Shown here one piece after another: positions 1 to 64,000 of a stretch of 64,000 nucleotides of DNA; the stretch's first letter is position 1; each line of letters begins with the position of its first letter. This stretch comes from Convolutriloba macropyga. Its lineage: Eukaryota. A program made the position numbers and the translations under genes. The DNA lies in contig NC_134479.1 of assembly GCF_964194025.1 (NCBI RefSeq), positions 40,858,001 through 40,922,000 of the forward strand. Reading direction: 5' to 3'. The notes beneath the pieces were generated by a model. The model did not search any database and was not told where the DNA came from. It saw only the letters and a program-made list of their open reading frames with translations.

Positions 1-2609
1 TTGTTGAGAGTTTTTTGTTTAATTGCTTTAACTGTTTTTCTGCTAGCCATCTGTTGTTTGGTAACTTGGCGTTTTCCTTCCAAAGAAGGCCTATTTCGTA
101 GTGACCATCAGAGAAGTTTGTAGTCGACTCAAGGATTTGCAGAGCTTTTTCATCATTTTTAGACATAGCCCTTTTTGATGAAGCTATATGGTAGTTCTCA
201 ATTTTCATCCACTGTTGTACTTTTGTGAAAAGTTCATTGTATAGATGAGGATGAGAGTTGATTTGTGTTTTGAACACTGGATTCTGTTCGTCTGCTGTGA
301 CGCTAGTTTTACCTGCACATGTCCATCCTAGAGGAGTTTCTACAGCCCAGGGCGTGTTTTCTGGGCCTTTAATCACCTTACTGTAATGGATCAGTTCCAG
401 ATTGTCGATGCCGATGATTATTGAGACTTTATTTTCATCAACATTAGGGAACGAAATGTGATTGAGATGTTCAAATTTCTTGCAAAGCTTGTTCAGCTCA
501 TTAGTGTTAACAGGGTTCATATTCAAATCGGGTACTGCCAAGACTTCGTTTACAAGGACTGGTGTCTTATTAGATTGATAAGGTTTAATTTTTAAAGACA
601 CTGGAGAACAATCTATTTCTTTTGTTGTGTGGTAGCCACTAATAGGCATCTTGCCAAAAGTGTTCATATCAATAGCTAGAATCAGAGCTGCGGATTGGAG
701 GAAGAGGCTCTGGCAACTTCCGTTTTCGAGATAAGCATATGTCTCAAACGTTTTCTCCCCGTTAGACAGTTGAACTGGTAAGAAAGCAACTTGACCTGTG
801 CCATGCAGTTGAACCGATTTAACTGTTGAAGAGGGTCGGATTCCTTGATTTTTTGCAATGAAGTTTTCATGGAGCATTGTGTGGTGCTTTTTGCCGCAGT
901 CTGCAGAGCGAAAAACATTTTTTGATGTGCATTGTTGTACATGGTGACTACCAAAACAGTTGAAACATAGTTTCAATTTTTTCACGTGTTCTCGTCTCTC
1001 GAGTGGAGACAGATCTTGGAAATGAGAACATTTGTATAAATACTGACAGCTACCGTTGTTTGGACAAACGACATCTTTCGCAGAGCTTGGTTGAAAGCTA
1101 TTTGACGGGTTTGTGCGTTGATCTTGGTGTGATCTGTTGGACGGACGGTTGAATTGGGTTTGGAGATTCGATTGCTTCCAAAGCTGGTTAGAGGCCTTTG
1201 AATGAGTGCTTGGAGGTTGAGCTGATGCACAAGAGGTGGGTAAATCTCTACAAGCCTTCGCATAGATTAGAAGCCACTCCGAAAGCTCTCTCAGAGATGG
1301 TTGAAGTAAACTTCTTTCCAAAGCGTGCTTATTCCATTCCAAGCGGACTGGTGTTGGAAGCTTGTTTAAGGCTTGATTGACATTTGTAGTGGAATGTATG
1401 TCATGGTTGAATCCAAGTTGCTGAAATGTGTCCACAAGGGTTAAAAGGAAAGCAGAGAACTGCGTGTAACTGTCTGGGATTGTCAGGTTAGGGGGTCTAA
1501 AATGTGACAGTTTTTCGAGGAAGGCATTGACAATCCTGTTCGGATTACCAAAATGTTCTTCCAGACGTGCTAAAGCCGGTGCGTACAGACTGCCATTGCA
1601 GCCATAGCCGTCAACCAGTGCTTTTGCTTCTCCAATCAGGAGCGATTGCAGATGAATCATTTTTTTCTGCAGAGGACATTGGAGAACGATCAATTGTTGC
1701 TTGAAACACACTGAACCACTTTAACCAACTTAATGGATCTCCATCAAACTTTGTTGCCTGTAACTTCGGAACCGATTTCTGAAAACGATGTACTGTAAAG
1801 GATGGTTGCGAAGTTCTGATTGGCGGATTTAAAGAAGAAGTTTGAGCCGCCTGATGAGAAACATGGAATGAGGGAAATGCGCCGTCGATTTTTGCGGAAG
1901 TGGAATTGAAGCCACCAGAGGTAACTCCAGACAAGGCATTGTTGATGGTGCTGGTGTCTGATACGTCAGCAGATGTGGTGGTGAGTTGTTGCGACAAATT
2001 TGCCGGCGGCAAAATTGTGTTTGAATCTCCCATTAAGCTACTGGGTGCAGCATTGTTAAGGAAGGATTCACTGTAAGAACGGTATTCAGCGGGTGCTGAG
2101 AAAATGTTGGTCGTTAGGGATGCCTCAGTATGAGTTTGATAACTGCTGTTTTCAAAGGTTACCCTCGGGATGTTGTTTGTTTGGTTGCTTTGTGTTGCGG
2201 ACACAAGTTCCTTTTTGTATTTTCGGTATGCGGAAGTAATCTTCCGTATCTTGAATTTGAGTTTGCTCAAATGGGAGCATAGAGTTTCTGCACCAGATGA
2301 TGGTGCTTTGTCTAAAAGTTCTTGAATTGTAACTTCGTACTTCTCCTGAAGTTCCTTGATTTCAAGGAGAGTTTCTTCGACTGTTTCTGAGTCCTCGCCG
2401 CAGTCGATGCCGGATGTAATAAATTCGATGCACGACTCGATTTCACTTTCGTACATCAACTTTAAGTTGGTCAGACGTTTTAAATGGGGATCTTCAGAGA
2501 CCTGCTCGTGACTTTCGGTGTTGTCGTCTGAGTATTGTGTCTGCGAATTTGAGGAGATCATTGTTTGGTTGTTACTTTCTGTGGATTTTCCAGTTCTAGT
2601 AAAAACCAT
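1..2609 (-). pseudogene. BEL/Pao gag-protease, copy A (same frameshift; 14-aa in-frame deletion)
   Basis: ATG at 2609. Same A7 frameshift near 1660-1666. Lacks most of LPTVGIVPQTPTSMSSC present in copy B. Confidence 0.85.
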
Positions 2610-2691
2610 TGATTTTGACCGGTCTAACAAAGACAGCTTCTTTCTTCGAAGCGCTACGTAATTTTTTTAGCAAGTCTGTTAGAAACTGCAA

Positions 2692-3082
2692 AACCTACCT
2701 GGTAAACCTACCTGAATACCTAAAAACCTACTAGATACCTACCTGAAACCTAACCAGAGACCAAATTGAAAACTACCTGAAAAAAAAACTAGCTGAATAC
2801 CTAAAATCTACCAAATACCTACCTGGACCTACCTGCAACCTAACTGAAACCTACTCAATAACCTACCGGATACCACTGAAACCTACCTTATACCACCAGA
2901 GGAACCTACCTGAAAACCTAACCGATTACTTTAAAAAAAACCCTACCTGGATATGCCTACCTGAAACCTACCTGCAACCTACCTGATGTGTATTCAATAA
3001 CCTACCAGATACCACTTAAACCTACCTGATAACACCAGAGAAAGCTACCTGAACAACCGAAACCTACCTGAATACCCTACCA
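2692..3082 (-). repeat. Degenerate ACCTACCTGA (minus strand TCAGGTAGGT) array upstream of gag, with an internal ~140-bp repeat
   Basis: Many acctacct(g) units; block 2828-2916 resembles 2968-3055. Confidence 0.8.
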
Positions 3083-4102
3083 ATGCCGACTCTACATAGC
3101 ATTTGGAAAAAATATATAGTTCAGAATAAGGTCGTTGTTTTTCCGGACATAAAAACAAAAAGAATGCTGTTTAAACATGTTTGGTGCGCTCGTGTGTGTT
3201 ACGCTCGTTTCGTAAAATTGGGAACGGATATTAAAGCGCTCGGTCGGAATTACCGGAAAATGCAAGAAAATAAAATTGTTGAAACATCGAATTTTTGTCA
3301 GTAATTTTTGGTCATATCCGGAAAAAATTCTCAGGCTGCAAGAAAGGGGTGAATAATCAAACGGGCGAAAAAATAACAGGGAAAGATAAATAATATTGAA
3401 ATAAGAAAGCCCAGTTAAATATTTGAAGCTCGTCTCGTGATGGAATGGGTGTTCTCCCGGGTGTTGGATGGGATGGGTATTTTTCTAAAATTTCCTTCTC
3501 TACCCTTTTTACGAGAAAAAAATTCTTCGAGAAGGAAATTTTAGTTCCTTTGTCTTTTTCGTTAGGCGTCAGAATGTCACATTGGCCGCCTTAAGTATAC
3601 TCAGGAAATCATTTTGCTTATTGGAATTAATAATGATGATACAAGCGTTTAAGATAAATAAATCAGTTCTCAGTTTTTTAGTTTTTTGTGTGTTGAAATT
3701 CGACTGCTTTTCTTTGCTTCCTTTTGTTTTTTCACTTCTTCTCTTAACCATTGAAGGTCTGTTTTGGGCAAAGATCCATAATAGTGCATAGATGTTCTCT
3801 AATTAATTGGGCATCAATGATGTATTGATGACATCTTTTTATTTCCTTAAAATTGCAACATACAGCATTGCAATTCAGTTGTGTTTGAAATCGGCAGTGA
3901 TCAAATAATTGTGGTGTCACATTCTTAAATAAAGAAAAAAAATCGGGTTGGATTCTTGCCTTGTTTGTGCGAAATTTTTTATTAGATTTGGAATCAACTG
4001 CTAAACCAAAGGCCCAGGTACATTGGCGGTATTTTGATGTTCGGTTTATTGTTTCTAAACCTTAAGCCTTGATTGAAGGTCTGTTTTTCATAGTATAAAT
4101 AC

Positions 4103-7100
4103 TCAGCGGACTGGTGTTGGAAGCTTGTTTAAGGCTTGATTGACATTTGTAGTGGAATGTATGTCATGGTTGAATCCAAGTTGCTGAAATGTGTCCACAA
4201 GGGTTAATCCTAATATGACTCCCACAAGATTACTCAACAAATCGGGTCCCTTCAAAAGGTTTGATTTCAAGGATTGACCTTGAAAAACACTGGATGCATT
4301 GGTGACTCTCCTGATTTTTCCGGGTTTGTTTTCATTTGAAACGGGATGATGAGGAAGATAAGAACATGCTGTTTCTTTGTCTGTAGCTGGATCAACTTTG
4401 ACAACATAACCATTGTGAAGATCTTTCTGGAGCGTCTCCTCGTACTTACTTTGTAGATCTGGTTTTGTTGAGAGTTTTTTGTTTAATTGCTTTAACTGTT
4501 TTTCTGCTAGCCATCTGTTGTTTGGTAACTTGGCGTTTTCCTTCCAAAGAAGGCCTATTTCGTAGTGACCATCAGAGAAGTTTGTAGTCGACTCAAGGAT
4601 TTGCAGAGCTTTTTCATCATTTTTAGACATAGCCCTTTTTGATGAAGCTATATGGTAGTTCTCAATTTTCATCCACTGTTGTACTTTTGTGAAAAGTTCA
4701 TTGTATAGATGAGGATGAGAGTTGATTTGTGTTTTGAACACTGGATTCTGTTCGTCTGCTGTGACGCTAGTTTTACCTGCACATGTCCATCCTAGAGGAG
4801 TTTCTACAGCCCAGGGCGTGTTTTCTGGGCTTTTAATCACCTTACTGTAATGGATCAGTTCCAGATTGTCGATGCCGATGATTATTGAGACTTTATTTTC
4901 ATCAACATTAGGGAACGAAATGTGATTGAGATGTTCAAATTTCTTGCAAAGCTTGTTCAGCTCATTAGTGTTAACAGGGTTCATATTCAAATCGGGTACT
5001 GCCAAGACTTCGTTTACAAGGACTGGTGTCTTATTAGATTGATAAGGTTTAATTTTTAAAGACACTGGAGAACAATCTATTTCTTTTGTTGTGTGGTAGC
5101 CACTAATAGGCATCTTGCCAAAAGTGTTCATATCAATACCTAGAATCAGAGCTGCGGATTGGAGGAAGAGGCTCTGGCAACTTCCGTTTTCGAGATAAGC
5201 ATATGTCTCAAACGTTTTCTCCCCGTTAGACAGTTGAACTGGTAAGAAAGCAACTTGACCTGTGCCATGCAGTTGAACCGATTTAACTGTTGAAGAGGGT
5301 CGGATTCCTTGATTTTTTGCAATGAAGTTTTCATGGAGCATTGTGTGGTGCTTTTTGCCGCAGTCTGCAGAGCGAAAAACATTTTTTGATGTGCATTGTT
5401 GTACATGGTGACTACCAAAACAGTTGAAACATAGTTTCAATTTTTTCACGTGTTCTCGTCTCTCGAGTGGAGACAGATCTTGGAAATGAGAACATTTGTA
5501 TAAATACTGACAGCTACCGTTGTTTGGACAAACGACATCTTTCGCAGAGCTTGGTTGAAAGCTATTTGACGGGTTTGTGCGTTGATCTTGGTGTGATCTG
5601 TTGGACGGACGGTTGAATTGGGTTTGGAGATTCGATTGCTTCCAAAGCTGGTTAGAGGCCTTTGAATGAGTGCTTGGAGGTTGAGCTGATGCACAAGAGG
5701 TGGGTAAATCTCTACAAGCCTTCGCATAGATTAGAAGCCACTCCGAAAGCTCTCTCAGAGATGGTTGAAGTAAACTTCTTTCCAAAGCGTGCTTATTCCA
5801 TTCCAAGCGGACTGGTGTTGGAAACTTGTTTAAGGCTTGATTGACATTTGTAGTGGAATGTATGTCATGGTTGAATCCAAGTTGCTGAAATGTGTCCACA
5901 AGGGTTAAAAGGAAAGCAGAGAACTGCGTGTAACTGTCTGGGATTGTCAGGTTAGGGGGTCTAAAATGTGACAGTTTTTCGAGGAAGGCATTGACAATCC
6001 TGTTCGGATTACCAAAATGTTCTTCCAGACGTGCTAAAGCGGGTGCGTACAGACTGCCATTGCAGCCATAGCCGCCAACCAGTGCTTTTGCTTCTCCAAT
6101 CAGGAGCGATTGCAGATGAATCATTTTTTTCTGCAGAGGACATTGGAGAACGATCAATTGTTGCTTGAAACACACTGAACCACTTTAACCAACTTAATGG
6201 ATCTCCATCAAACTTTGTTGCCTGTAACTTCGGAACCGATTTCTGAAAACAAGAAGACATTGAGGTAGGAGTCTGAGGCACAATACCAACTGTTGGAAGT
6301 GTAAAGGATGGTTGCGAAGTTCTGATTGGCGGATTTAAAGAAGAAGTTTGAGCCGCCTGATGAGAAACATGGAATGAGGGAAATGCGCCGTCGATTTTTG
6401 CGGAAGTGGAATTGAAGCCACCAGAGGTAACTCCAGACAAGGCATTGTTGATGGTGCTGGTGTCTGATACGTCAGCAGATGTGGTGGTGAGTTGTTGCGA
6501 CAAATTTGCCGGCGGCAAAATTGTGTTTGAATCTCCCATTAAGCTACTGGGTGCAGCATTGTTAAGGAAGGATTCACTGTAAGAACGGTATTCAGCGGGT
6601 GCTGAGAAAATGTTGGTCGTTAGGGATGCCTCAGTATGAGTTTGATAACTGCTGTTTTCAAAGGTTACCCTCGGGATGTTATTTGTTTGGTTGCTTTGTG
6701 TTGCGGACACAAGTTCCTTTTTGTATTTTCGGTATGCGGAAGTAATCTTCCGTATCTTGAATTTGAGTTTGCTCAAATGGGAGCATAGAGTTTCTGCATC
6801 AGATGATGGTGCTTTGTCTAAAAGTTCTTGAATTGTAACTTCGTACTTCTCCTGAAGTTCCTTGATTTCAAGGAGAGTTTCTTCGACTGTTTCTGAGTCC
6901 TCGCCGCAGTCGATGCCGGATGTAATAAATTCGATGCACGACTCGATTTCACTTTCGTACATCAACTTTAAGTTGGTCAGACGTTTTAAATGGGGATCTT
7001 CAGAGACCTGCTCGTGACTTTCGGTGTTGTCGTCTGAGTATTGTGTCTGCGAATTTGAGGAGATCATTGTTTGGTTGTTACTTTCTGTGGATTTTCCAGT

Positions 7101-7115
7101 TCTAGTAAAAACCAT
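4103..7115 (-). pseudogene. BEL/Pao gag-protease-partial RT polyprotein, frameshifted and truncated
   Basis: ATG at 7115 (MVFTRTGKST). An A7 run at 6124-6130 shifts SSAEK|MIHLQSLL between ORFs 6009-7136 and 4103-6175. The protease motif reads LENGS instead of LD(S/N)GS. Confidence 0.85.
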
Positions 7116-8612
7116 TGATTTTGACCGGTCTAACAAAGACAGCTTCTTTCTTCGAAGCGCTACGAAATTTTTTCAGCAAGTCTGTTAGAAACTGCAAAAC
7201 CTACCTGGTAAACCTACCTGAATACCTAAAAACCTACTAGATACCTACCTGAAACCTAACCAGAGACCAAATTGAAAACTACCTGAAAAAAAACTAGCTG
7301 AATACCTAAAATCTACCAAATACCTACCTGGACCTACCTGCAACCTAACTGAAACCTACTCAATAACCTACCGGATACCACTGAAACCTACCTTATACCA
7401 CCAGAGGAACCTACCTGAAAACCTAACCGATTACTTTAAAAAAAACCCTACCTGGATATGCCTACCTGAAACCTACCTGCAACCTACCTGATGTGTATTC
7501 AATAACCTACCAGATACCACTTAAACCTACCTGATAACACCAGAGAAAGCTACCTGAACAACCGAAACCTACCTGAATACCCTACCAATGCCGACTCTAC
7601 ATAGCATTTGGAAAAAATATATAGTTCAGAATAAGGTCGTTGTTTTTCCGGACATAAAAACAAAAAGAATGCTGTTTAAACATGTTTGGTGCGCTCGTGT
7701 GTGTTACGCTCGTTTCGTAAAATTGGGAACGGATATTAAAGCGCTCGGTCGGAATTACCGGAAAATGCAAGAAAATAAAATTGTTGAAACATCGAATTTT
7801 TGTCAGTAATTTTTGGTCATATCCGGAAAAAATTCTCAGGCTGCAAGAAAGGGGTGAATAATCAAACGGGCGAAAAAATAACAGGGAAAGATAAATAATA
7901 TTGAAATAAGAAAGCCCAGTTAAATATTTGAAGCTCGTCTCGTGATGGAATGGGTGTTCTCCCGGGTGTTGGATGGGATGGGTATTTTTCTAAAATTTCC
8001 TTCTCTACCCTTTTTACGAGAAAAAAATTCTTCGAGAAGGAAATTTTAGTTCCTTTGTCTTTTTCGTATGGCGTCAGAATGTCACATTGGCCGCCTTAAG
8101 TATACTCAGGAAATCATTTTGCTTATTGGAATTAATAATGATGATACAAGCGTTTAAGATAAATAAATCAGTTCTCAGTTTTTTAGTTTTTTGTGTGTTG
8201 AAATTCGACTGCTTTTCTTTGCTTCCTTTTGTTTTTTCACTTCTTCTCTTAACCATTGAAGGTCTGTTTTGGGCAAAGATCCATAATAGTGCATAGATGT
8301 TCTCTAATTAATTGGGCATCAATGATGTATTGATGATATCTTTTTATTTCCTTAAAATTGCAACATACAGCATTGCAATTCAGTTGTGTTTGAAATCGGC
8401 AGTGATCAAATAATTGTGGTGTCACATTCTTAAATAAAGAAAAAAAATCGGGTTGGATTCTTGCCTTGTTTGTGCGAAATTTTTTATTAGATTTGGAATC
8501 AACTGCTAAACCAAAGGCCCAGGTACATTGGCGGTATTTTGATGTTCGGTTTATTGTTTCTAAACCTTAAGCCTTGATTGAAGGTGTTGTTTTTCATAGT
8601 ATAAATACTCAG
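4107..8612 (-). mobile_element. BEL/Pao LTR-retrotransposon-derived unit, copy B (truncated within RT; no RNase H or integrase)
   Basis: The 690-aa ORF shows BEL hallmarks: CFNCFGSHHVQQC and CGKKHHTMLH knuckles, protease YAYLENGS, ETPLGW, GHYEIGLLWK, YLPHHPV..KPGKIRRV..AS, NLLKGPDLL. It then breaks off. Confidence 0.9.
7198..7587 (-). repeat. Second copy of the ACCTACCTGA array
   Basis: Duplicate of 2692-3082. Confidence 0.8.
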
Positions 8613-16382: not shown

Positions 16383-16582
16383 NNNNNNNNNNNNNNNNNN
16401 NNNNNNNNNNNNNNNNNNNNNNNNNNNNNNNNNNNNNNNNNNNNNNNNNNNNNNNNNNNNNNNNNNNNNNNNNNNNNNNNNNNNNNNNNNNNNNNNNNNN
16501 NNNNNNNNNNNNNNNNNNNNNNNNNNNNNNNNNNNNNNNNNNNNNNNNNNNNNNNNNNNNNNNNNNNNNNNNNNNNNNNNNN
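16383..16582. other. Assembly gap
   Basis: Run of N. Confidence 1.
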
Positions 16583-16614: not shown

Positions 16615-18025
16615 ATGGACAACGTGGTTGATTGGCCGCGAGTGAACCAGTTTGATCAAAACTGGTTGTCAATCTCTATCATCTATAGATAACTTGGAAA
16701 ACACACTACAAAATTTGAAATTGATGCATTGCCTTTTCGCTAACGTGAACAGAAGAAACAGGTTCATGTTCTGCCAGAAGGTCAAAGATAACGACTTTGT
16801 GTCATCAGCCAAAAGTTTTCTCTTAAAATGTGATTATCAAAATAAATTCGATGGAATTCTTTATCAACTTTCCGAAAGGATTATTGGACTGTTGTGGAAT
16901 TTGTGTGATATCAGCGATGGCATTTGCCAACAAGTTGTCGAAGCTAACTTTCACGAAATGTTCATTCAAGATTTGAAGGACAATGAAATGCTTGCCCTTG
17001 AGAAGTTAGACGATTCCGAAACGGACACTTTTAACCCGGAGTCTGGAAGACAGCGGGTGCACTCATACCTGGGCGTCATGTTTAATCTTTTGAAAACATA
17101 CCCCGAATCTCGAGAGGAGTTACAAAAATTTGGACTTATTGAAGTGCTCCTCAAGCTGATTTTCGTAGAGGATGAACTTCTAAAAAGTGTCGTGGTATCC
17201 ACTTTGGCATTTGCAGTTGACGTGCATAGAGAAGATCAACAATCCCTAAAGAGCGTTAGTAATCTGACTTCACTCATTACTAAATTTTCCTTATTATTAC
17301 TTACCACTTTTTGTTTATTTCATTATCGGGGTCGGCTTTGTTGTATATATTATTTGAACGAAGGTTTTTACTACAATCTGAAGCACCAGGGTTCGAAGAT
17401 CATATTTAATTGCAAAAATCTAGTTTCAATCATGTTTTAGATAAAACACAACTTGAAGCCTCCATTTATTAATCATTCAGCAACTTTTTTTAGAAACTTT
17501 CACAAAATTTAATTTAAAAAGTTTCACAAAACTTTTCTAGAATTAACTTGTTCAGAATATTTTACAAAACTCTAGTTCAATGTCAAAAAATGGACAGAAA
17601 AGCAATTGATTAAAGTGTTTGAAGTGCATCCTAATTGTATTTGGAGCCTCAAAGTGGATTTATTTGTTTCGACTCCTTTGTTTGAACACTCAAAAAAATT
17701 TCAAATTTCTTAAAGAAACCAACACATTCTCTGTTCAGTAAATAAAACAAAAATTTAGTCGAAAATAATGTTGAGTCCGATGTTCTCAGTATATAAAAAC
17801 AACAAAATAACGAAAAAAGGAACAAACAAATCAGCGAAGAAAAGAAAAATGTTAATTACACAAAATAATCAATTTAACAGCTCGAACGGTGACCTAAAAT
17901 AAGCTGATAGCCTTTGTCTGGTGCTTCCAGATGTCTGGGAACTATAATATAACAGGCAAATTCTTAATGGCAAATCAACCTCAATATTTTTTTAATGTGT
18001 TCAGCCTAAAGTGTTTAAATCTGTT

Positions 18026-18063
<38 letters not shown>

Positions 18064-21000
18064 AGGCTTCTGTGGGTCTTTCCACATGGGTTTGCACCCT
18101 TCATATAACGACTGAGCTGAGCTTCTGCACCGTGTTACAATGTCCACAGCTGCAGTTGAAAGCCCAGGAACATAAGTTGACTTCCGAATAACTTTTGAAG
18201 AAGTAGTTCCAGTATATTTTTGTTAAATATTTCTTATCAATTTGATCGAGATCGACGTTCCCTACTTTTCGTATTATATTTAGTAAATAACTGGTTCTTT
18301 TCCAGAAGTTTTCATCAGCCTTCCTTGTTCTTGTTTTATTAATTGTTATTAGCTCATTTTGACGTGTGCTTAACAACCCTTCATTATTGTTTGTTTTAAT
18401 GGGTATTTTTATATTGATCCTTTAAGCAGTATTTTTATAAGATCCTTTAAGCAGTGAGATGAGCATTAATAGATCATGCAATTCAAAGTAATATGACAAT
18501 GGCAGCAACTTCAGTGTGGTCAGTCTTTGCTTGTAACTAATTTCCCAGTTACTGATTATCCACGACGTTGCTTTTCTTTGAATGCGCTCGATGCCTTTGC
18601 TTTCTGTCTTATTCGCGAACCATGCTTGTGAGTCATAACTTATGACTGGTATAACGTAGCCGACATATGCATTGAGTTTTGTTGTTTGCGATGCAACGTT
18701 TGATATGTTTCGTTTTAGGAAATAAAACGCTTTCCAGGCTTTGCTACAACGTTTCTTTATATTCGCTTTCCATGATAACTTAGTAGCCATAATTATACCT
18801 AGATCTTTTTGCTCGGTTTTATTTGAGAGAGTTTTAGAGTTAAGTATAAAGGAGTGCCAGTTTTTTTCGTTTACTTTAATCGGTAGGATGTGACATTTGC
18901 TTTCATTGAGTTGCATTTTGTTGTTATGGCACCATTTTTCGATTTTTTCCAGGTCACTTTGTATATTTGCTGGATTTGTTGATACAAGCTTGAAATCATC
19001 TGCGTATCCAAACGCAGAGCATTTTGATGTTTGTTGTGGAAGATCGTTTATATATATTATCAAAAGTAGGGGACCTAGGAGAGATCCCTGGGGGACACCA
19101 CTGGTTACTGGTACAGTTTCAGATTCCGAGTCATTTACTTTCACGTATTGTTTTTTATTTGATAGGTAACTGGCTACAATCTTTAAGAATTTCCCCCTAC
19201 ACCCAGGTTGTCCACTTTGTTAATCAGAAGATCGTGAGGAACTGTATCGAACGCTTTTTTGAAGTCAAGGTAAAGTACAAAAATTTCGTTGTCTTTTTCG
19301 TCGAATTCATTATACAACAGGTCTAGGAAAAGCAACATCTGGGTTACTACTGATCTATGCATTCTAAATCCGTGTTGTGATTCTTCTAGCTTTGTCTTGA
19401 CAGTTTCATATAGTTCGTCGAAAATTAGTTTTTCTAATACTTTGAGACGCTACATAAGAGACTAATAGGGCGGTATTGTTCAATCAATGCCCGATTCTCA
19501 TCCTTAAATATTGGTACAACTTCACTGATTTTCCAGTAGGATGGAAAAAAGCCTTTGTTCAAGGCAGTTTTGAAAATCAGAAAAAGTGATTTAGACAAGG
19601 CTGGCAGATTTTTTAGTACTGTGTTTCCCATCCTGTCTGGGCCGCAGGCTTTGTTTGTTTGAAGTTGTGACAGGATTTCTTTGATCTTACTCTCGTCTAT
19701 TTCAATTTTATTGTGCTGATGTTTATCGAAGGAGTTTTTCTTTATTTGATTGGTTTTAAGGAAAACTTTAGAAAAGAATTCACTGAAAAACGCACACTTT
19801 TTCTTATCTTCATTAGTTCGTGCATCCTTGTTTTTCATTGTTTCCGGGCATCTACTACTTTTATGACTTGACTTGAGATATTTTTGAAGATCCGAAAAAC
19901 GTCTACCTTGAAAGACTTTACTTTCGAATTCTGCTTGGTCCTCATTCAAGGAATTTCTTAATCGTTTTTCCATTTTCTTCAGTTTTATTAATCTCGCCAA
20001 GGTGGATTTCTTTGATGTTTTTCGTTTTAAGGTTGATATTATTTTAACAAGGTGGGAAGAATCTTTGCTTACCCAAGGAGCTAAGTTTGATCTGTGGGTT
20101 GTTGTTTTTGGGACATTTTCGCTAAGAACTTTGTCTAGCCATTTGTAAGATGCATGCATACTCCGCATGCTACACATAGAAAAATGGCAGATTTATTTTC
20201 AATGCTCGTTGAGCAACTTTTGCATCGGTTGTGTTTTGTTTTTTCTTTTTGCTCTTGACTGATTTTGTCGTTTCTGTTGATTTACTTTAGTTTCAAAAAT
20301 ATTTCTATCGTTTTAAAAGATTGTTACGATCTTTATTAAATCGACGTTCGTGTCAAATGATAGTAGGAAACCGTGATCTCCGTGCGGGGATCTATGGTTT
20401 ATTGAACTTGTTACTTTTGACCGTGATCTCCGTGCGGGGATCTATGGTTTTACTGGAATTACATGGTATACGAGGAGCTGCTGGAGGAAGGATAGAAAAG
20501 AGCCCGTGACCGCCGTACGGGGGTCTATGGTACTCTAATCTAATCGAAAAAACTGCACCGACAACCGGTATCACGGGAACACTCGAAAACTTGTGGGTGC
20601 TTTTCAGCTGCTAGCTTGTTCGTATACAAAACCTTGTTTTTTAGTAACGATACTACTTGGCCTTTTCTTTTGTTGTTGAGATGGACGTTGTCGTTGTCTG
20701 AAATTTGAGCACTGGAGTAGATAGCGTCTGCTAAGCCCCGAAAACCCCAATCGTATTTTTTGGATAGCTGATGAAGTTTTCGATTAACTGCGCGATGGCG
20801 AAGCAGGTCGTGGTCCTCGTACTCGGATTTAACTTGTTCAATTTCGTGTTCTGGGGGAAAACGTGGTGGGATGCCAAAACAAAAACGTTATCGGTAACTT
20901 CAAAAAGGGTAATTGCTAACTCACAGATACTGTCAACTACTTCCTGCACTGGAGTGTTGGAGGGCAAATATCCGTTGTACAAGTCGTTTCCACCAATGAA

Positions 21001-24000
21001 TATTGCTATTTTATCGTATTTTCCTTTTGGTTGTATGAAGTTTTGCACGTGTTTCACCCCTGCGCCAGGAAGGGACAGGATGTTGATTTCAGGGTAAATG
21101 AGTTGTCTGACATGTGAGTCACCAATCAGCAGGCCTTTGTTGTTTGACGTCTTGAAAGTGTGATATCTCATTTAAACATACACGCAGGTCACTGAAACCC
21201 TTCCATTGAAGGTCTTCCACACCTTGCGTTGGTAGACGTTTAACATGAAACTATTTAATAAGTTTATCCTCAAGCTTACAAATTAAAGTTTAGTTAAAGT
21301 TTGGCCTCAAGCTTACAAATATCTCACAAGCAGTTAGAAATTAACCATTCAGTCTCGCCCGAAATTTATAAGCGAGGCCAGCTTTTCTTTTCTTCATTCG
21401 AATCTCTAATTTCTGATTACGCTGAAGTACTGATTTCATTATAGTTTGTATTATTGTATAATTTTGTTTCAAAAAGGACAACTTCCACTGGAAAAACCTA
21501 ACACAATGGAAAAAATGGGTGTAGGTGGGTGGGGTACGTGGGAGTGGGAGGGGGGTTGAGGCGGGGGAGGGGGAGGGGTGTGCGTGTGTATGTGTATATG
21601 TGTGATAAACCTGATATTCTGCAGTTCTATACATTTATTTTAACAACAGCTACATGGAATTAAACCTAATAATTTTTAAATAAAGGGTGAAAAAAGGTTT
21701 AGAAAAACCCAAAAGGACGTAAGTTTGTTTTACAACTAATCTTTATGATAAGTCTCCTCTGAACTGTATTGTGATTAAAAATCAATTCAAATAGCTGAAC
21801 AGCTCAAAAATTTTGGAATTCAAAAGCGTTAACTTTTCACTTTCTAAAAAATGTACATATGGAAACTTAATAAGGTCTTCAGAAATTTTCTTAGTTCAGA
21901 ATTTATAGTTGTATTTTTCACTCGCTTTCACATTTTTCACTCAAATTCCGATGAAAGTCAGAAAACAATTTTTTTCTCAAAAAAGAAATTGAAATGAAGT
22001 TTAAAAGACGGAAATAATAAAAATAGCTGAGCTGAAAAACGGAATAAATATTCTCTACCATTCTCTATTTGCATTCGCTTTCTAACTTCTACAAATTTAA
22101 CCAAATAATGATTTTCTTGCAAGAAAGTGAGCCGAAAATGTTTTTAGGTAATGTAACGAGGAAAACCTCAAATCTGCTTGTAAATTATTTGTCTGGAATT
22201 GCTATTTTTTTCAGTGTTCTCTGAGCATAGTTTATAAGAAGTAGCGAAAACTTTTCGAAATAAGTGTTCCATATAATCAAAAACTGATCAACATTTTTTA
22301 CCGAGAGTTTAAAACTGTACAATTTGAAAAAATAAAACCTCAAAACTAGAAAATTTTCGACTCTATTCAAAACTTTTTTTAAATATAAATATGCATCAAA
22401 AGTGTTCGTCTCCAAGTGTTGATTCTTTTTGTGCGTTTAATATCGACAACACTTAAATTGTCGATATTAAACGTGATCGACGCTTTCCCCCTAAAATACT
22501 GCTTCAAGATTTTAAGGACAATCTTTTTCTTCTTGAGATAAAAACTCTTTTGGCAAGTCTTCAGAGACTTGTTAAAAGATTTGTGCTACTCAGCCACTCG
22601 CGCGATCCGTGTTGTTTCTTCTTGTCCCTTGATTCTTTGCTTCCTAATAAATTTAAGTTCATATTTGATTGTTATATTTGTTTCCAAATGTTTAGGTTAG
22701 AAGACCTGTCATAAGTTTTCTAGTTCAACGATTGTTGATAACGTCAGTAGAAAACGAAAACGTTACCCAACAATCAATGAAGAAATCGTTTAAAACAACC
22801 ACAGAAGGACGTGCTGTTCACTTTTGTGCCAGCGAAGTTTTCGAATTTCTATCAAGATTGGCAGTTAATGGAAATAATGCAACGGAAATGATCAAACAAG
22901 GTGTCTTTGCAATTTGCGAATCATTTTTGGAAACTAGTTGTGAGAACGAAGCTGCAATGACCTTGGCAGATACTAGCAAGCACCCTGCTATCCACTGGGC
23001 CCTTCGTTTACTTTGGCGAATTAGTTTTATACGTGAAGCCCTCTTCATGTTTACATTTAAGGATTTGATCAAATGTTTCAGGGCATCTGTTTCCTTTTCC
23101 CCTCGTGAACAAATCAAAATTTTCAGAAGACTTCGTGAACAAACTATCTCGCATTTTTCCATTAACAGTATGGTTTGCATAGCCAAATACATTCAACAAC
23201 AAAAGTCATTAACGTTCAAATAACAAAATTATACAATGAACTGCCTGTTTTTTGAGCTTTTTTCAGTAAACTGCGGAAGATAAACGTATATAGTTTGAAC
23301 AATTTTTTAGAAAAACAGAAGTATGAAATGATTCTGGCAAAAAAATGCTTATCATGTAGAATTCTGTTAGAAATTGTAATCATAAGAGTAGCATATGTGA
23401 TTGCTTTGGTTTCATGCAAGGATCGAACTAAGATATCAAGTATGGACAGCATGATATCATAATTGATCCTTGTATGAAATCAAAGAAATTTCAAGCCGAG
23501 TACACAACTTGATCGCGCCTACATCATTTGCGGCAAGTTGTGTGTTGTTAATTTATGAATTTCATGATAAGTTTTTTATCCACAGATTTCACGTGGTATT
23601 GAACGTACTGCTTCTTACAGAAAACTGGCAACTTTGAATCTCAATTTTCTCCGAAAATAATATTGTCGTTTGTCTTGAATTTGAAGCAATTGAATTTCTA
23701 TCGATTTGCATTTGATTCATCTAAGGAAAAGGAAAACGAAATGTTTCTTAAAAACAGACTTTTTACTATGTAATTTTAGTCTTTGGACGTTTGCTTTTGT
23801 TACTGATTACCTCATGAGACCATAGTCATTACATTTGAAATGTGCAGCGCCACTTAAGTAATTTTAGTTACAGAAACGATTTAAACTCGACTTTTTTAAT
23901 TGGTTTCGTCAGTTTATTCGGTACATAAAAGCTAGAAAGCATAGGTATCCTTGTTTATTTTTTTAAAAACCGAACACAGATATAAACATACCGAATTTTT

Positions 24001-24744
24001 TTCCAAACAAACCAATTTTTTTTACTTTTCAAATGATAACAAATAAGTCTTCTTACAATAGGGTAATGACTGGTTCCAAGTGGGGCCAGGATTTAAGAAA
24101 AAGGGAAATTATAGATGGGCATAATTTACCGGGGAAAAGTAAACAATTCCCATTTCAAGGATCATCCAAGTACCGAAATTGTTGAAAGCGCAACAGGACT
24201 TATATTTTCCCTGGAAAAACTATCAGTTTCTAACAACGTCCCAACTGGTCGAGATACTGTAGATAAAAAGTACTCTAGCGATGAAAAACAATCAAGTTCA
24301 TGGATGTCAGCTCAAAAAAGCGATACGCAAAATAAAGGCCAGATATCAGTCATGATCAGTTATTCTTGGAAACAGAAAGAAACAATTTTGCGACTTCGGA
24401 AGGAGCTTGATGAAATCGGCAAATTTAAAATTTGGATCGACGATGACCATATGCACAAAAGCCGGAACATCCGAGCGGAAATGGCAAACGCTATTGACGG
24501 TGCCGATTTCGTAATCTGCTGTTATTCTAAAGCCTATGCTGAAAGCGAGAACTGCATGACTGAGTTTAACTATTCATGTGACTTCAAAAAGAATATGGTG
24601 TTCGTAAGAGTGGAAACGTCGGAATCCGACTATAAACCTCGTGGAAACCTCGGAGCTGTTGTTGCAGGAAAATTTTACTTTGATCTTGCAACGCCTGAAA
24701 ACTTTGATCAGAATTTCCCGAAGCTTGTCGAGCGTCTCGGTTAG
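16615..24744 (+). CDS. ARM-repeat + C-terminal TIR domain protein (SARM1-like architecture without visible SAM); exons ~16615/16652-17254, 22696-~23080, ~24160-24744
   Basis: ARM-like helices (IIGLLWNLCD, YLGVMFNL, FLSRLAVN, ALRLLWRISF). Phase-0 donor gttagt at 17255 fits phase-0 acceptor tttag at 22695. The last exon is a TIR. The 5' end and the exon2-exon3 junction are uncertain. Confidence 0.7.
18027..18060. repeat. (AG)17 microsatellite, i.e. the (CT)n tail of the LINE
   Basis: Seen directly. Confidence 0.95.
18101..20177 (-). pseudogene. LINE ORF2 reverse transcriptase (fragmented)
   Basis: Split over ORFs 19434-20177, ~19145-19440, 18422-19144 and 18101-18376. Confidence 0.88.
20620..21171 (-). 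pseudogene. LINE ORF1, SGNH/GDSL esterase-like
   Basis: LLIGDSH (block I), PGA (II), IGGND (III), and DNVHL (DxxH, block V) at ~20680-20698 beyond the ORF's stop. Confidence 0.75.
24160..24744 (+). CDS. Terminal exon encoding a TIR (TIR_2-like) domain
   Basis: VMISYSW, KIWIDD, MANAIDGADFVICCYSKAYAESENCMTEF, YKPRGNLG, YFD motifs. Confidence 0.88.
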   Translation, partial: DHPSTEIVESATGLIFSLEKLSVSNNVPTGRDTVDKKYSSDEKQSSSWMSAQKSDTQNKGQISVMISYSWKQKETILRLRKELDEIGKFKIWIDDDHMHKSRNIRAEMANAIDGADFVICCYSKAYAESENCMTEFNYSCDFKKNMVFVRVETSESDYKPRGNLGAVVAGKFYFDLATPENFDQNFPKLVERLG

Positions 24745-24862
24745 ATTATCACGGAAGCATTAATGGAAACAAAAAAGAGTTTTTCCCGTTATAGCCCCAG
24801 CGTGCAATTTATACCTCTCAGTTAACGTAAATGTACTATAATAGTTGCGCGTATGCCTGTGA

Positions 24863-32726: not shown

Positions 32727-37812
<5,086 letters not shown>

Positions 37813-38244: not shown

Positions 38245-41200
38245 CTATTTTTGATCCTCCATTAGATTGATAGTTTCACGAACGATGTGTTTCACAAGAA
38301 GGTAGGTAACTTTGTTGTCCATGTTAGCAGCGATTGTCACTATGATAGGTGTACTCCAGTCTCCCTTGGGTGCACAGATTAAAAGGTATGAACACATACC
38401 TGTAGTGGCTCCACTGTGACCCACCATTACTGTACCTAAAAATGTAAAACCTGTAAAAATTAATACTACTTTACAAATGCAACACTAAAAGTTGCTTACA
38501 ATTCTATTTGAGAACTTACACCTAATATGAATTTAATAAATTTAGCCTAACTAGAAGAAAGTTGGTTGAAAGAACTTGGACAAGAGTATGGCTAATATAT
38601 GCAAAAGCATCCTATAGAGTTCAACTCTTTTTTGGCAATTTAAATGGCATAAATGCGCCGCCCATATATTATCAGCAGATTTGGATCCATTAATTAGTAA
38701 GCATATTATGGTAATATAATATACATATTTAAAATCCTTATAATGATGTACATTAATTGCGTGATGCTAAATATACTAATCATCAAAAGCAAGTTAGCAC
38801 CCCCTAGTTTTATGAAGTAAAAATTAAAATTTTGAGACAATAATTTTTCAACCTGAAATCAAATTTAGAAAACAAAATTTACGCCATTATTCACCAAAAG
38901 AAGTGGTCTTGTCTACCTATGAAATTCAGATAGTTTGCTATGATAACTTAACATAAACCCCGAAGTAAAGTTGAACTCGATCCAAAATTCACAGAAAAGG
39001 GAAAGTTGCCACAAGATGTGATACGTTTTCAGGTTAGTTCAACTATGGCTATGTTTGGACTTGTGTTCATGAGAGAGAGAGAAAAGATGCGAATAAATTT
39101 TGATCTCTTGACAACTTTTTCTACTGTAAAAATTGGATGGAGTTCATCAAGTTTACATTTTGGTAGCTAATTAATTATTATTGCATATTATCTGAACTTC
39201 ATATACACGCAAGACCACTAGCGTAGAGAAACAATTGTTTTCAAAATGTGATTTTGAGTTAGAGCAATATTGCCTCAAAAATTTTTACTTCATAAAACTA
39301 GGGGGGGTTCTAATCTGATGTTTAGAATATTAACTGTAATAGTCTCGTTACCAAGACAAATGTAAAACGGGCATCAATTTGCTCACATTTGCCAATGAAA
39401 ACAAATATTTTGTTAAGATATTAGTGTTTGAGAAACAGGCCTCACCTGCGGGAAAACTGGGATCCTCTTCGTAGACTCCAAACCCAAGAGAGTACTTCAC
39501 ATTTGGGCGCCCAGGCACTGGAACCTCTTTACCCTTAGGTGGTCTCAAAATCTGATCGAAAACTTCCTCCTTCACACCTGACATTTTTTTTGTCCCCGCA
39601 AACTGATCAGCTAATAAAGTACCCAATCGGCAAAGATCGGATAAAGTCGACAGCATGCCACCGCCGGCAGTTTTATGCATTATGGTAATTTCTGGCGCTA
39701 AAGTCAAAGACACAGTTTTAGTATTGAACAAGTAGCACGGCAATCTGTTGAGAACTATCTCTCGTGACTTGGGAGTTGGCTCAGGCATCGTATGATTCAT
39801 GCCCAATTGACGCACAAAGTCATGAATGTACTCGTGGAAAGGCTTGTCAATAACTTTTTCCAGAACCGCACTCAGAAGGACAACGGCATACGTTGAGTAG
39901 TGAAACTTAGAGCCTGGTTTATGGAGAAGGTCATCGTCTGAAGCAATGAAATGCACGTGATGAAAATACTCAAAATTATTAGCAAATTGTACAATACATC
40001 CTCTCCACTTATTTATTTTTGTGACTGGGCCGTCTTTACACTGTCTGGAGGGGAACAGCTTGGAGTGCAGCATCCGGCTACTAAGTGCTACTCATCATAC
40101 CCTATTTTTCGACCTACATCCATCGATGCCGGATGGTGTACACGGCCCTTTTTTTATTTTTTTAAGAGAAAAAAAACAATACATCTCTCATCATCTCAAC
40201 CAACTTTGATAGATACAACTGCATCACGTTCGAATGGAAGTCAATGTTTTTCTTTGTATAATAATTCCGTTTTCAATAGTAGTAGTAGAATACAATAGGC
40301 TAAATTAGACACATAATAATGAGTAAGTGGAGTACAAAACAGATGCCAGGCATTCTTCCTGCTCAAACTATTACAGAGCTATTCAAAATCAATGATGATT
40401 ATTTACTTGTTCCGCTAATTTAAGGAACTTTTCTTATTCCATATTTTTATTAGCAAACTGTTTAAGTTCACTGTCCATTAAAAGTTTCTCAATATCAAAA
40501 TCACATAGTTTCTCAACTTTCTATCAAACCAACGACACACAATACTGTCCAAGTTGGATGATCAGAAACATATTTGATTCTCTTTGGTATACTTGCACGT
40601 TCTTTAAACCGACCTTTGAAAAATTTGATGGATTCACTTAAAGATACGAATTCGTCATTTCTCTGCGAATTCTTCGCAATTTCAGCAGTTCTTTCTTCAC
40701 CAGTGAGTGTAGAGCCGACCGGCAGATAATCTCTGATTCCAGATGTGTGATTCAACAACTGCCTAATTGTAATGTCTACCTCCCGTCCATCGATTCGTTT
40801 CTTCGGGAAGTCTTTCAGATGCTTGTAAATACTGTCGTCTAAATCTATTTTGCCCTCACTGGCTAGTTTGAGAGTGAGTACACCCGTAATAAGCTTACTG
40901 ATGCTTGCCACTCTGAATACTGACTGTGTAGGGTCGCATGACAAAAGCTGCTCTACGTTACAGTAGCCGAATCCTTTCTCAAACACGGGTTGAGTCCCTA
41001 TTTGCACCTACTCAGAGAAACAATTTGTCATTACTCTTTCATTAATAATTGTCAGATAACGAGTGTCGCAACGGAACGGGCAAAAAGCTCGAGAGGGTTC
41101 TATCAAAATTGCCCAAATTATCAAAATATCCCGTTTGTGAGAAAACGCCAAATCGGCTAGGTGAAAAACCAAGCAAAAAATCGCATGAAAAACTTAACAG

Positions 41201-63100: not shown

Positions 63101-64000
63101 ACATTTTTATGCCCCTTGGCAGCCGAACTCCTAGACCATTATGCCCCTCTGAAGAAATTACCCCTAACTCTTACACCATTTTACCCCCCTTGGCAGACCA
63201 ACTGCTACCTCATTTTACCCCCTCTGGACAAATTACAACCCCACTCTTACACCGTTTTACCCACCTTTGCAGCCCAACCCTTACATCATTTTACCCAACT
63301 GTACAAATTACCCACTCACTCTTACACCATTTTACCCCCCTTGGCCGCAAAAACTCTTGCATCATTTTGCCCCCCCTGGACAAATTACACCCTCACTCTT
63401 ACACCATTTCACCCTCCTTGGCGGCTCATTTATTAGCTCATTTCAACACCCTCTGGACAAATTACTCCCTCAATCTTACACCATTTTACCCCTTTGGCAG
63501 CCCACTCTTAAATGGCAATTAAAGTCAGGGGGGGGGAATTCCTCAAAAGTCCTCCCATTGAAGCCTAATGCAGCCCACTCTTACATGACAATTTCAGTCA
63601 GGGGGTAAATCCTCAAATGTCCTCCCATTGCAGCCCAACTCTCACATCATTTTACCCCTTCTGAACAAATTAACCCCACACTCTTACAACATTTTAGACC
63701 CCTTGGCAGTCCAACTCTTACATCATTTTACGCCCTCTGAACAAAGTATCCCTCACTCTTACACACTTTTACGCCCCTTGGCAGCCAAACTCTTAGATCA
63801 TTTTTCCCCTCTGAAGAAATTACCCCCTAACTCTTACACCATTTTACCCCCCTTGGCAGACCACCTCCTACCTCATTTTACCCCCTCTGGACAAATTACA
63901 CCCTCACTCTTACACCATTTTCCCCCCTTGGCAGCCCAACCCTTACATCATTTTACCCCCACTGTACAAATTACCCCCTCACTCTTACAACATTTCCCCC
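51165..64000. repeat. Satellite array: ~76-bp C-rich monomer with higher-order repeats and interspersed 60-71-bp type-B blocks
   Basis: Consensus ttggcagcccaactcttacatcattttaccccc-tctgaacaaattaccccctcactcttacaccattttacccccc. Runs off the window end. Confidence 0.98.

What the first reader, a model, noticed from the sequence alone, without database searches (positions are those of the whole stretch)
16615..24744. SAM-less ARM-TIR protein with an intact NADase-type catalytic glutamate
Seen: two ARM-like exons, a Ser/Lys-rich linker and a terminal TIR with YAESENCMTEF (Glu codon 24562-24564). Known: this Glu aligns with the catalytic Glu of NAD+-cleaving TIRs (SARM1, plant TNL TIRs, bacterial TIRs), and SARM1 uses ARM autoinhibition plus SAM oligomerisation. 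Inference: this may be an intracellular immune or cell-death enzyme whose ARM region is the sensor and which must assemble without SAM. ARM-TIR families exist in invertebrates but are poorly characterised.
Basis: partly seen in the sequence, partly recalled or inferred. Interest (0 to 1): 0.72.

Follow-up and report, generated by a model that had tools for sequence, protein, structure and literature searches.

The report
Acoel ARM-TIR gene without SAM
This is a real, transcribed three-exon gene of the acoel worm Convolutriloba macropyga that joins an armadillo-repeat domain to a TIR domain with the catalytic glutamate of NAD+-cleaving TIRs; it is an ordinary member of an invertebrate ARM-TIR family, made more interesting because acoels lack the Toll pathway.

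Summary
The gene is RefSeq LOC142350813 of the acoel Convolutriloba macropyga, a 500-aa "uncharacterized protein". Its three exons are 16724-17254, 22696-23082 and 24160-24744. One contig of a transcriptome-like run joins all three exons, and the junction is absent from a DNA run, so no SAM exon lies in 23.1-24.1 kb.

An AlphaFold model (pLDDT 82.7) shows an armadillo solenoid (residues 1-330; beta-catenin Z 22.6), a disordered Ser/Lys/Asp/Gln-rich linker and a TIR_2 domain (75 bits). The glutamate at codon 24562-24564 is E441. It aligns with the catalytic Glu of plant TNL TIRs and bacterial Cat1, and 18 of 19 family TIRs keep it.

The TIR is not SARM1-type. The Trp four residues before the Glu is Asn. 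Enzymatic activity remains an inference, but published rotifer and fish TIRs with the same motif are active.

New here:
- A sister clade in the same genome carries a C-terminal SAM fold (ARM-TIR-SAM).
- SAM-less and SAM-bearing clades are both old.
- Intron 2 is a GC-AG intron that a paralogue lacks.

Verdict: a new member of a known kind, of moderate interest.

The parts
16383..16582 (.). 200-N assembly gap 32 bp upstream of the first readable base of exon 1. The promoter and 5' end are not readable. The gap was not filled.
16615..16692 (+). This frame is out of register with the ARM ORF. It has weak similarity to homologues' N-termini (DW-PRVNQ-FDQ against DWSTRINDAFDQ).
16646..16723 (+). 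In-frame extension of the ARM ORF upstream of the annotated Met. It is homologous to the N-termini of paralogue P0002 and relative P0004 but has no ATG. This implies a 1-nt frameshift near the A-run at 16658-16661, either real or an assembly error about 75 nt from the contig end.
16724..17254 (+). Exon 1 coding part (residues 1-177): the first half of the armadillo-repeat domain. The donor is GTTAGT at 17255.
   Evidence: (loose end ...CCCTAAAGAGC joined to 22696)
17255..22695 (+). Intron 1 (GT..AG, 5441 bp). On the minus strand it holds LINE-type reverse-transcriptase fragments (18422-20177) and a GDSL-like ORF (20731-21171).
22696..23082 (+). Exon 2 (residues 178-306): the second half of the armadillo-repeat domain.
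   Evidence: (X5 contig covers 22696-23081 with 0 differences)
23083..24159 (+). Intron 2 (GC..AG, 1077 bp). It is skipped in the RNA-like contig and holds a very high-copy repeat at about 23331-23572. It is absent from the 69% paralogue and from intronless relatives. Its last 7 nt (TTTCAAG) nearly repeat the 7 nt before it (TTTCAGG).
24160..24744 (+). Exon 3 (residues 307-500 plus the TAG stop). It encodes the last ARM helices (to about 24231), the disordered linker (about 24235-24333) and the TIR_2 domain (24340-24741).
24562..24564 (+). GAG encoding Glu441 in the motif S-E-N-C-M-T-E-F. It aligns with the catalytic Glu of plant TIRs (CLxEL) and Cat1 (CWDEL). The residue four positions before it is Asn437, where those proteins have Trp.

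Best explanation
This is an intact, expressed, cytosolic-type gene of the acoel Convolutriloba macropyga. It encodes an armadillo-repeat solenoid of about 330 aa, a disordered linker of about 35 aa and a C-terminal TIR_2 domain, with no SAM domain.

Most likely the TIR is an NAD+-processing enzyme, either a cADPR-type cyclase or an NADase, that uses Glu441. It would be kept quiet by, or targeted through, the ARM domain and become active when TIR domains are brought together.

Shown: the gene structure, transcription, folds, conservation of the Glu, purifying selection and family relationships.

Inferred: catalysis, the product, ARM as regulator or sensor, the mode of assembly and an immune or symbiosis-related role.
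For: Gene and transcript:
- The spliced CDS equals RefSeq protein P0001.
- A 1114-nt contig of run X5 joins the end of exon 1, all of exon 2 and 45 nt of exon 3. X5 covers exons only, and DNA run X1 lacks the junction.

Selection:
- dN/dS is 0.15 against the 99% twin copy. Against the 69% paralogue pN is 0.28 and pS 0.78.

Folds:
- The model has pLDDT 82.7.
- The ARM fold matches beta-catenin at Z 22.6.
- TIR_2 scores 75 bits.

Catalytic site:
- The Glu aligns with the catalytic Glu of SNC1, RPP1, ROQ1 and Cat1.
- The best solved relatives of the family TIR profile are NAD+-cleaving TIRs: Cat1 at 2e-9 and ROQ1 at 7.5e-7.
- 18 of 19 family TIRs keep the Glu.

Published activity (Table S4 of bioRxiv 10.64898/2026.04.20.719644):
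- TIRs with the same signature, M[IL]SYxW...W[IM]D...SxxYxxSx[NS]CxxE[FL]xY, were tested.
- Adineta steineri and Clupea harengus TIRs made cADPR, and the Latimeria TIR depleted NAD+.
- All three lack the Trp four residues before the Glu.
- Active non-TLR animal TIRs in that study include ARM-containing architectures.

Organism context:
- Acoels lack TLR, MyD88, IRAK and NF-kB (PMC12849515), so a role as a classical Toll adaptor is unlikely.
Against: - No activity was measured.
- A Glu is necessary but not sufficient. Only 12 of 61 Glu-bearing animal TIRs were active in E. coli.
- Two tested TIRs with an Asn four residues before the Glu were inactive: Didymodactylos, and the chytrid Rhizoclosmatium.
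- The conserved Trp at that position is Asn437 here and Asn, Ala or Pro across the family.
- My assignment of the published active TIRs to the same clade rests on motif comparison by eye, not on a computed tree.
- The annotated protein lacks the first ~25-45 residues that homologues have, because of a frameshift or assembly error next to the gap.
- Nothing here tests ARM-TIR autoinhibition or oligomerisation.
Confidence: 0.5

Rival explanations
1. A non-enzymatic scaffold. The TIR only mediates TIR-TIR contacts with some of the other ~35 TIR loci of this genome, the ARM domain recruits partners, and the Glu is kept for structural reasons.
For: Most Glu-bearing animal TIRs tested (49 of 61) showed no product in the only broad screen. 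The aromatic Trp of the NAD+ pocket is missing. One family member (P0007) has Gln in place of the Glu and is otherwise conserved. The genome holds many TIR architectures that could partner with it, including Ank-TIR, ubiquitin-TIR, TIR-HEAT and double TIR.
Against: The canonical partners of scaffold TIRs (TLR, MyD88, IRAK, NF-kB) are absent from acoels (PMC12849515). The Glu is kept in 18 of 19 family TIRs over deep divergence of about 30% identity. The closest solved relatives by profile are enzymes. Tested TIRs with the same motif are active.
Confidence: 0.3
2. An enzyme with another TIR chemistry, such as NAD-RNA decapping or nucleic-acid cleavage, rather than NAD+ depletion or cyclisation.
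For: TIR domains from bacteria and archaea can remove nicotinamide from NAD-capped RNA (PMC10937652, title and abstract seen). The altered pocket, Asn for Trp, could change the substrate.
Against: No specific feature points to it. Relatives with the same motif made cADPR or depleted NAD+.
Confidence: 0.1
3. A decaying duplicate. One of two near-identical copies is becoming a pseudogene, as suggested by the N-terminal frameshift, TE-filled introns and a weak GC donor.
For: ATG 16615 is out of frame with the conserved ORF. Intron 2 has a non-consensus donor, AGG|GCATCT. There is a twin copy 389 kb away.
Against: The gene is transcribed and correctly spliced. The 500-codon ORF has no stops. dN/dS is 0.15 between the twins. 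The frameshift lies about 75 nt from a contig end, where consensus errors are common. An in-frame Met at 16724 still yields a well-folded ARM model.
Confidence: 0.07

Closest known systems
SARM1 / C. elegans TIR-1 (ARM-SAM-SAM-TIR NADase)
   Same: Both have an N-terminal armadillo-repeat domain and a C-terminal TIR with a Glu in the catalytic position. Full-length hSARM1 is among the Foldseek hits (7anw, E 9e-5). Sister paralogues carry a SAM fold whose best matches include SARM1 SAM (Z 8.8, 26% identity) and TIR-1 SAM (Z 8.6).
   Different: This protein has no SAM domains. Where the family does have SAM, there is one copy after the TIR, not two before it. The TIR is not SARM1-type: the family profile finds no SARM1 chain at E<=0.01, and Trp638 of SARM1 corresponds to Asn. 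The ARM domains share only about 12% identity. No canonical SAM-SAM-TIR locus was found near any TIR_2 match in this genome by a crude test.
Invertebrate cytosolic ARM-TIR proteins (the 'ecTIR-DC' families of Gerdol et al. 2017, Dev Comp Immunol 70:145, as cited in PMC6836662 and PMC6321704)
   Same: They share the ARM-like N-terminal region plus a TIR_2 domain, with no LRR, TM or death domain. ESM Atlas neighbours by features and by shape are mollusc clusters with TIR_2+Arm and rotifer TIR proteins.
   Different: The N-terminal domain is very divergent. A scan of 1.84 billion representatives found only 18 relatives at E<=0.001. I could not read the 2017 classification itself, so no family number can be assigned.
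Glu-bearing animal TIRs shown to be catalytic (Hurieva et al. 2026, bioRxiv 10.64898/2026.04.20.719644)
   Same: They share the TIR sequence signature, including Ser or Asn instead of Trp four residues before the Glu. Adineta steineri A0A814VN55 and Clupea A0A6P8EVF3 made cADPR, and Latimeria H2ZXV5 depleted NAD+.
   Different: The fish proteins are short, at 236-296 aa. No acoel TIR was in that study. The kinship was judged by eye from printed sequences.
Plant TNL TIR domains (ROQ1, RPP1, SNC1) and bacterial Cat1
   Same: These are the best solved sequence relatives of the family TIR profile, with the motif SxxYxxSxxCxxE aligned residue for residue.
   Different: The partner domains differ (NB-ARC-LRR; CARF). 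They keep the Trp before the Cys, and identity is only about 25-30% over roughly 85 residues.

Membership tests
TIR_2 domain (Pfam PF13676) | Score above the curated gathering threshold over the whole domain | tested here: met
   75.4 bits against a cut-off of 28, covering profile positions 1-122 of 122. The model shows the beta-alpha fold at residues 367-500.
Armadillo-repeat proteins | Right-handed superhelix of three-helix ARM repeats | tested here: met
   The sequence HMM is below threshold (Arm 15 bits, cut-off 20.6). The predicted structure matches beta-catenin at Z 22.6, APC-ARM at Z 20 and designed ARM proteins at Z 20 over residues 1-330.
SARM1 family | Tandem SAM domains between ARM and TIR | tested here: not met
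   The RNA-like contig skips 23083-24159 entirely. There is no SAM hit in P0001 at E<=5. Intronless relatives join ARM to TIR directly.
SARM1 family | SARM1-type TIR domain | tested here: not met
   The family TIR profile against all PDB sequences gives 22 hits at E<=0.01, and none is SARM1. The Atlas feature score to SARM1 clusters is only 0.87.
SARM1 family | Catalytic Glu in helix alpha-C | tested here: met
   E441 aligns with the catalytic Glu of plant TIRs and Cat1. By eye it also aligns with E642 of SARM1 in KDWVHKEI (sequence printed).
Catalytic (NAD+-processing) TIR domains | Conserved Glu protruding from alpha-C into the pocket | tested here: met
   The Glu is present in 18 of 19 family TIRs.
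Catalytic (NAD+-processing) TIR domains | Aromatic Trp four residues before the Glu (W638 in SARM1; the plant SxWCLxEL motif) | tested here: not met
   Asn437 aligns with that Trp. The family has Asn, Ala or Pro at this position. It is not an absolute requirement, because published active TIRs have Ser or Asn there.
Catalytic (NAD+-processing) TIR domains | Measured, Glu-dependent NAD+ turnover | not testable with these tools
   This needs a recombinant protein assay.
TLR / MyD88-type signalling TIR proteins | LRR ectodomain plus TM (TLR), or a death domain (MyD88) | tested here: not met
   Pfam finds only Arm (weak) and TIR families in P0001. Acoels lack these pathway members (PMC12849515).

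The most novel reading that the evidence does not exclude
In acoels, which have lost TLR, MyD88, IRAK and NF-kB, this ARM-TIR/ARM-TIR-SAM family may be the core of a Toll-independent, enzyme-based TIR signalling system. SAM-bearing paralogues would form the oligomeric hub. SAM-less members such as this one would be recruited sensors or modulators whose ARM domains read pathogen- or symbiont-derived cues and whose TIRs make cADPR-type second messengers. This would be a sensor/helper arrangement built from the same three domain types as SARM1, in a permuted order.
Probability: 0.1. Interest if true: 0.7.

Novelty: new member of a known kind. Interest (0 to 1): 0.4.

Why it matters
TIR domains are now known to be enzymes in bacteria, in plants and, according to a 2026 preprint, in many animals. 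In most animals, however, enzymatic and scaffold roles are entangled with Toll signalling. Acoels have lost the Toll pathway but keep at least 30 TIR_2 loci, including this conserved, expressed ARM-TIR family. They therefore offer a natural background in which any TIR function must be Toll-independent.

The coexistence of ARM-TIR and ARM-TIR-SAM clades also bears on how ARM, SAM and TIR modules were shuffled around SARM1-like proteins. C. macropyga is a photosymbiotic laboratory species with infection assays available, so the questions can be tested.

Tried and rejected
- Complex prediction on two copies of the TIR domain (residues 362-500) gave no answer, with scores of 0.00 and 0.00 and the controls not run. 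This is evidence neither for nor against self-association.
- The search for homologous proteins found only the query itself, both with P0001 residues 1-340 and with residues 362-500. With an alignment of N-terminal domains it added only two proteins, P0022 and P0023. The word index is too coarse for this family.
- The look-up of sequencing runs lists no run on record as RNA. The splicing evidence rests on run X5, which the tool guesses to be DNA. X5 behaves like a transcriptome: it covers exons only, shows a spliced joint and has poly(A) loose ends.
- Only one read-laying run was allowed, so the exon 1 frameshift at about 16658 could not be checked against reads.
- The supplements of PMC12849515 contain no TIR or SARM entries.
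- A SAM-like exon downstream of the TIR was sought by tblastn with the C15 paralogue against the whole window and none was found. Pfam did not call SAM on that paralogue, but structure prediction did show a SAM fold.
- I looked for a canonical SARM1 by co-location of SAM_2 and TIR_2 matches. No pair lies within 100 kb. The one triple-SAM locus, at C11:35.95 Mb, has no TIR similarity by tblastn and looks like an unrelated multi-SAM gene. This test is crude and does not prove absence.
- The organism behind the ENA relatives (assemblies ERZ25071366 and ERZ25878734) could not be identified.
- The search of earlier findings returned nothing for this place.
Full report
**What is at the site**

The window is C12:40,858,001-40,922,000 of a 1.18-Gb animal genome. 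A protein search returned a 500-aa database protein, P0001. It is 100% identical to the first ARM-like ORF and is named by NCBI [quoted passage not shown]. The host is therefore an acoel worm, whose genome note is PMC13650328. Splicing 16724-17254, 22696-23082 and 24160-24741 reproduces P0001 exactly. The peptide YAESENCMTEF is in exon 3, and GAG at 24562-24564 is in frame and encodes Glu441.

**Exon chain and the "hidden SAM exon" test**

No run is on record as RNA. Run X5, from a 2016 study with 159 M letters, behaves like a transcriptome:
- It covers 22696-23081 and 24160-24769 but not the flanking intron sequence.
- One 1114-nt contig carries 683 nt of upstream sequence ending in ...CCCTAAAGAGC, which is the end of exon 1 at 17254. 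It then carries exon 2 with no differences, followed by 45 nt of exon 3.
- The joint skips 1077 nt. With the allowed shift the skipped stretch is 23083-24159, with GC..AG ends.
- DNA run X1 of the same species covers the intron and lacks the joint.

ARM and TIR exons are thus one mRNA, and nothing from 23.1-24.1 kb is included. Intron 1 (17255-22695, GT..AG) holds LINE reverse-transcriptase fragments on the other strand.

**N-terminus**

The ARM frame is open only from 16646, and its first ATG is at 16724. Homology to paralogue P0002 and to relatives extends upstream of that Met, to about 16649. The 16615 frame weakly resembles their extreme N-termini. The simplest reading is a 1-nt frameshift in the A-run at 16658-16661. 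It lies about 75 nt from the end of a contig that abuts a 200-N gap, so it may be an assembly error. I could not test this and did not touch the gap. The annotated protein lacks the ~25-45 N-terminal residues that homologues have.

**Domains**

An AlphaFold2 model built on a 28-sequence family alignment has mean pLDDT 82.7. It shows:
- an all-helical region at residues 1-330;
- a disordered stretch at 332-364, rich in Ser, Lys, Asp and Gln;
- a beta-alpha TIR fold at 367-500.

Sequence alone does not establish ARM (Pfam Arm 15 bits, cut-off 20.6). The fold does: Foldseek ranks designed armadillo proteins first at 2e-5, and hSARM1 appears at 9e-5. A second alignment of those hits gives beta-catenin Z 22.6 (265 residues, rmsd 4.0) and APC-ARM Z 20. 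TIR_2 is unambiguous at 75.4 bits against a cut-off of 28.

**Catalytic site**

In pairwise alignments to solved structures...YSKAYAESENCMTEF aligns with ...FSKNYASSTWCLNEL of SNC1 and with the same motif in RPP1 and ROQ1. This puts E441 on their catalytic Glu.

A profile of 12 family TIRs finds as best solved relatives:
- bacterial Cat1 (2e-9);
- ROQ1 (7.5e-7);
- a chain deposited as ADP-ribosyl cyclase/cyclic ADP-ribose hydrolase, 7xoz (2e-5), and RPP1 (5teb, 1.7e-4);
- TLR6, TLR1 and TLR2 at about 1e-4.

It finds no SARM1 chain. The Glu is present in 18 of 19 family TIRs; P0007 has Gln. One difference stands out. The Trp four residues before the Glu in those proteins (W638 in SARM1) is Asn437 here, and Asn, Ala or Pro in the family.

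**Family and the SAM question**

The genome has at least 36 TIR_2 matches. Their architectures include Ank-TIR, ubiquitin-TIR, TIR-HEAT and double TIR.

Close paralogues of this gene:
- A 99% twin lies 389 kb away on the opposite strand. A second contig in both X5 and X1 differs from the window at nine positions in exon 3 and probably represents the twin, which would mean the twin is transcribed too.
- A 69% paralogue at C12:41.37-41.39 Mb has exons 2 and 3 as one continuous ORF.

Purifying selection is clear. Between the twins dN/dS is 0.15. Against the 69% paralogue pN is 0.28 and pS 0.78.

More distant paralogues are intronless ORFs of 630-650 aa at C15:26.07 and 26.10 Mb and C1:33.90 Mb. 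They have the same ARM and TIR plus a C-terminal extension of about 80 aa. A model of that extension (pLDDT about 85 over the folded part) was searched without Foldseek against 48,161 chains. The top matches are almost exclusively SAM domains, including human SARM1 SAM (Z 8.8, 26% identity) and C. elegans TIR-1 (Z 8.6). Pfam SAM_2 gives a weak hit at E 0.0044. The wider family therefore includes ARM-TIR-SAM, a permutation of SARM1's ARM-SAM-SAM-TIR.

Intronless relatives of both kinds occur in unidentified eukaryote-like ENA assemblies. A maximum-likelihood tree of 18 full-length rows was built, leaving out partial rows: the twin, the 69% paralogue and fragments P0002, P0003, P0006, P0009, P0011, P0012, P0014, P0017 and P0018. 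It recovers a SAM-less clade containing this gene (support 95/94) and a SAM-bearing clade (85/90). Each clade mixes C. macropyga and ENA sequences. Absence of SAM is thus an old, clade-wide state and not a gene-model artefact.

**Context from the literature**

- PMC12849515 reports that acoels lack TLRs, MyD88, IRAKs and NF-kB. It does not discuss SARM or other TIR proteins.
- Cytosolic ARM-plus-TIR proteins are a recognised invertebrate class, the ecTIR-DC families. Atlas neighbours of this protein are mollusc Arm+TIR_2 clusters, rotifer TIR clusters and green-algal Arm+SAM_2+TIR_2 clusters.
- A 2026 preprint (10.64898/2026.04.20.719644) shows that most non-TLR animal TIRs keep the Glu and that 12 of 61 tested produce cADPR or deplete NAD+ in E. 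coli in a Glu-dependent way.
- In its Table S4, TIRs with the same signature as this family and without the Trp are active: Adineta steineri and Clupea harengus make cADPR, and Latimeria depletes NAD+. A Didymodactylos TIR and a chytrid TIR are not active. I compared these by eye only.

**Mechanism and rivals**

My best reading (confidence 0.5) is a Glu441-dependent NAD+-processing TIR held in check or targeted by its ARM domain. It would be activated by induced proximity, without SAM, through TIR-TIR or ARM contacts or through SAM-bearing paralogues.

The rivals are:
- a purely scaffolding TIR (0.3);
- another TIR chemistry (0.1);
- a decaying duplicate (0.07).

The scaffold rival is weakened by the loss of the Toll pathway in acoels and by deep conservation of the Glu. 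It is kept alive by the low hit rate of the published screen and by the missing Trp.

**Verdict**

This is a correct observation of an already annotated but uncharacterised gene. It is a new member of a known kind (invertebrate ARM-TIR proteins). It is not a SARM1 orthologue, because two defining features were tested and not met. Interest is moderate (0.4), mainly because of the Toll-less host and the sister ARM-TIR-SAM clade.

Noticed in passing
window 23083-24159; compare L003 (G000:C12:41369918-41373241): Intron 2 looks like a lineage-specific gain. The 69% paralogue and all intronless relatives read straight through this point. The intron uses a rare GC donor in a poor context (AGG|GCATCT). 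Its last 7 nt (TTTCAAG) nearly duplicate the 7 exon nt before it (TTTCAGG), like a target-site duplication. It also carries a very high-copy repeat at about 23331-23572, with depth in the tens of thousands in the DNA run.
   Followed up: partly
L005, L006 (G000:C15:26.07-26.10 Mb), L004 (C1:33.90 Mb), L008 (C12:49.98 Mb): Paralogues have the order ARM-TIR-SAM, that is, SARM1's three domain types permuted. Their SAM fold is closest to the CNK, SARM1 and TIR-1 SAM domains.
   Followed up: yes
G000:C12:41270027-41277459 (L002, L014): An inverted near-identical twin of the whole gene lies 389 kb away, probably transcribed too. Both copies have a 200-N gap inside or beside exon 1, which suggests that the assembly broke at this segmental duplication.
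   Followed up: partly
G000 genome-wide: The genome has at least 36 TIR_2 matches despite the reported loss of TLR and MyD88. Architectures include Ank-TIR (C1:34.23 Mb, C6:48.03 Mb), ubiquitin-TIR (C8:9.10 Mb), TIR-HEAT (C8:19.10 and 19.15 Mb) and double TIR (C6:13.93, C16:36.75, C4:57.98 Mb). A WD40-TIR sits on a 56% GC mini-contig (C3351) that may not be host DNA.
   Followed up: partly
window 51164-63995: About 13 kb is a ~76-bp (and 150/152-bp) tandem satellite with 46% GC and extreme GC skew (-0.5 to -0.7). The long ORFs it produces are repeat artefacts.
   Followed up: partly
window 1611-7136 (- strand): A retrotransposon-like element has two nearly identical gag-like ORFs (1611-2630 and 6009-7136) and a 690-aa ORF with a DUF1759 match.
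   Followed up: no
window 32727-33338 (-) and 39348-41007 (-): The neighbouring host genes are an exon of an rRNA adenine dimethylase (RrnaAD, 1e-30) and exons of a beta-lactamase-fold (LACTB-like) gene.
   Followed up: no
window 18422-21171 (- strand, inside intron 1): There is a LINE-type element with an RVT_1 fragment (7e-17) and an upstream 146-aa ORF with a weak GDSL-lipase-like match.
   Followed up: no
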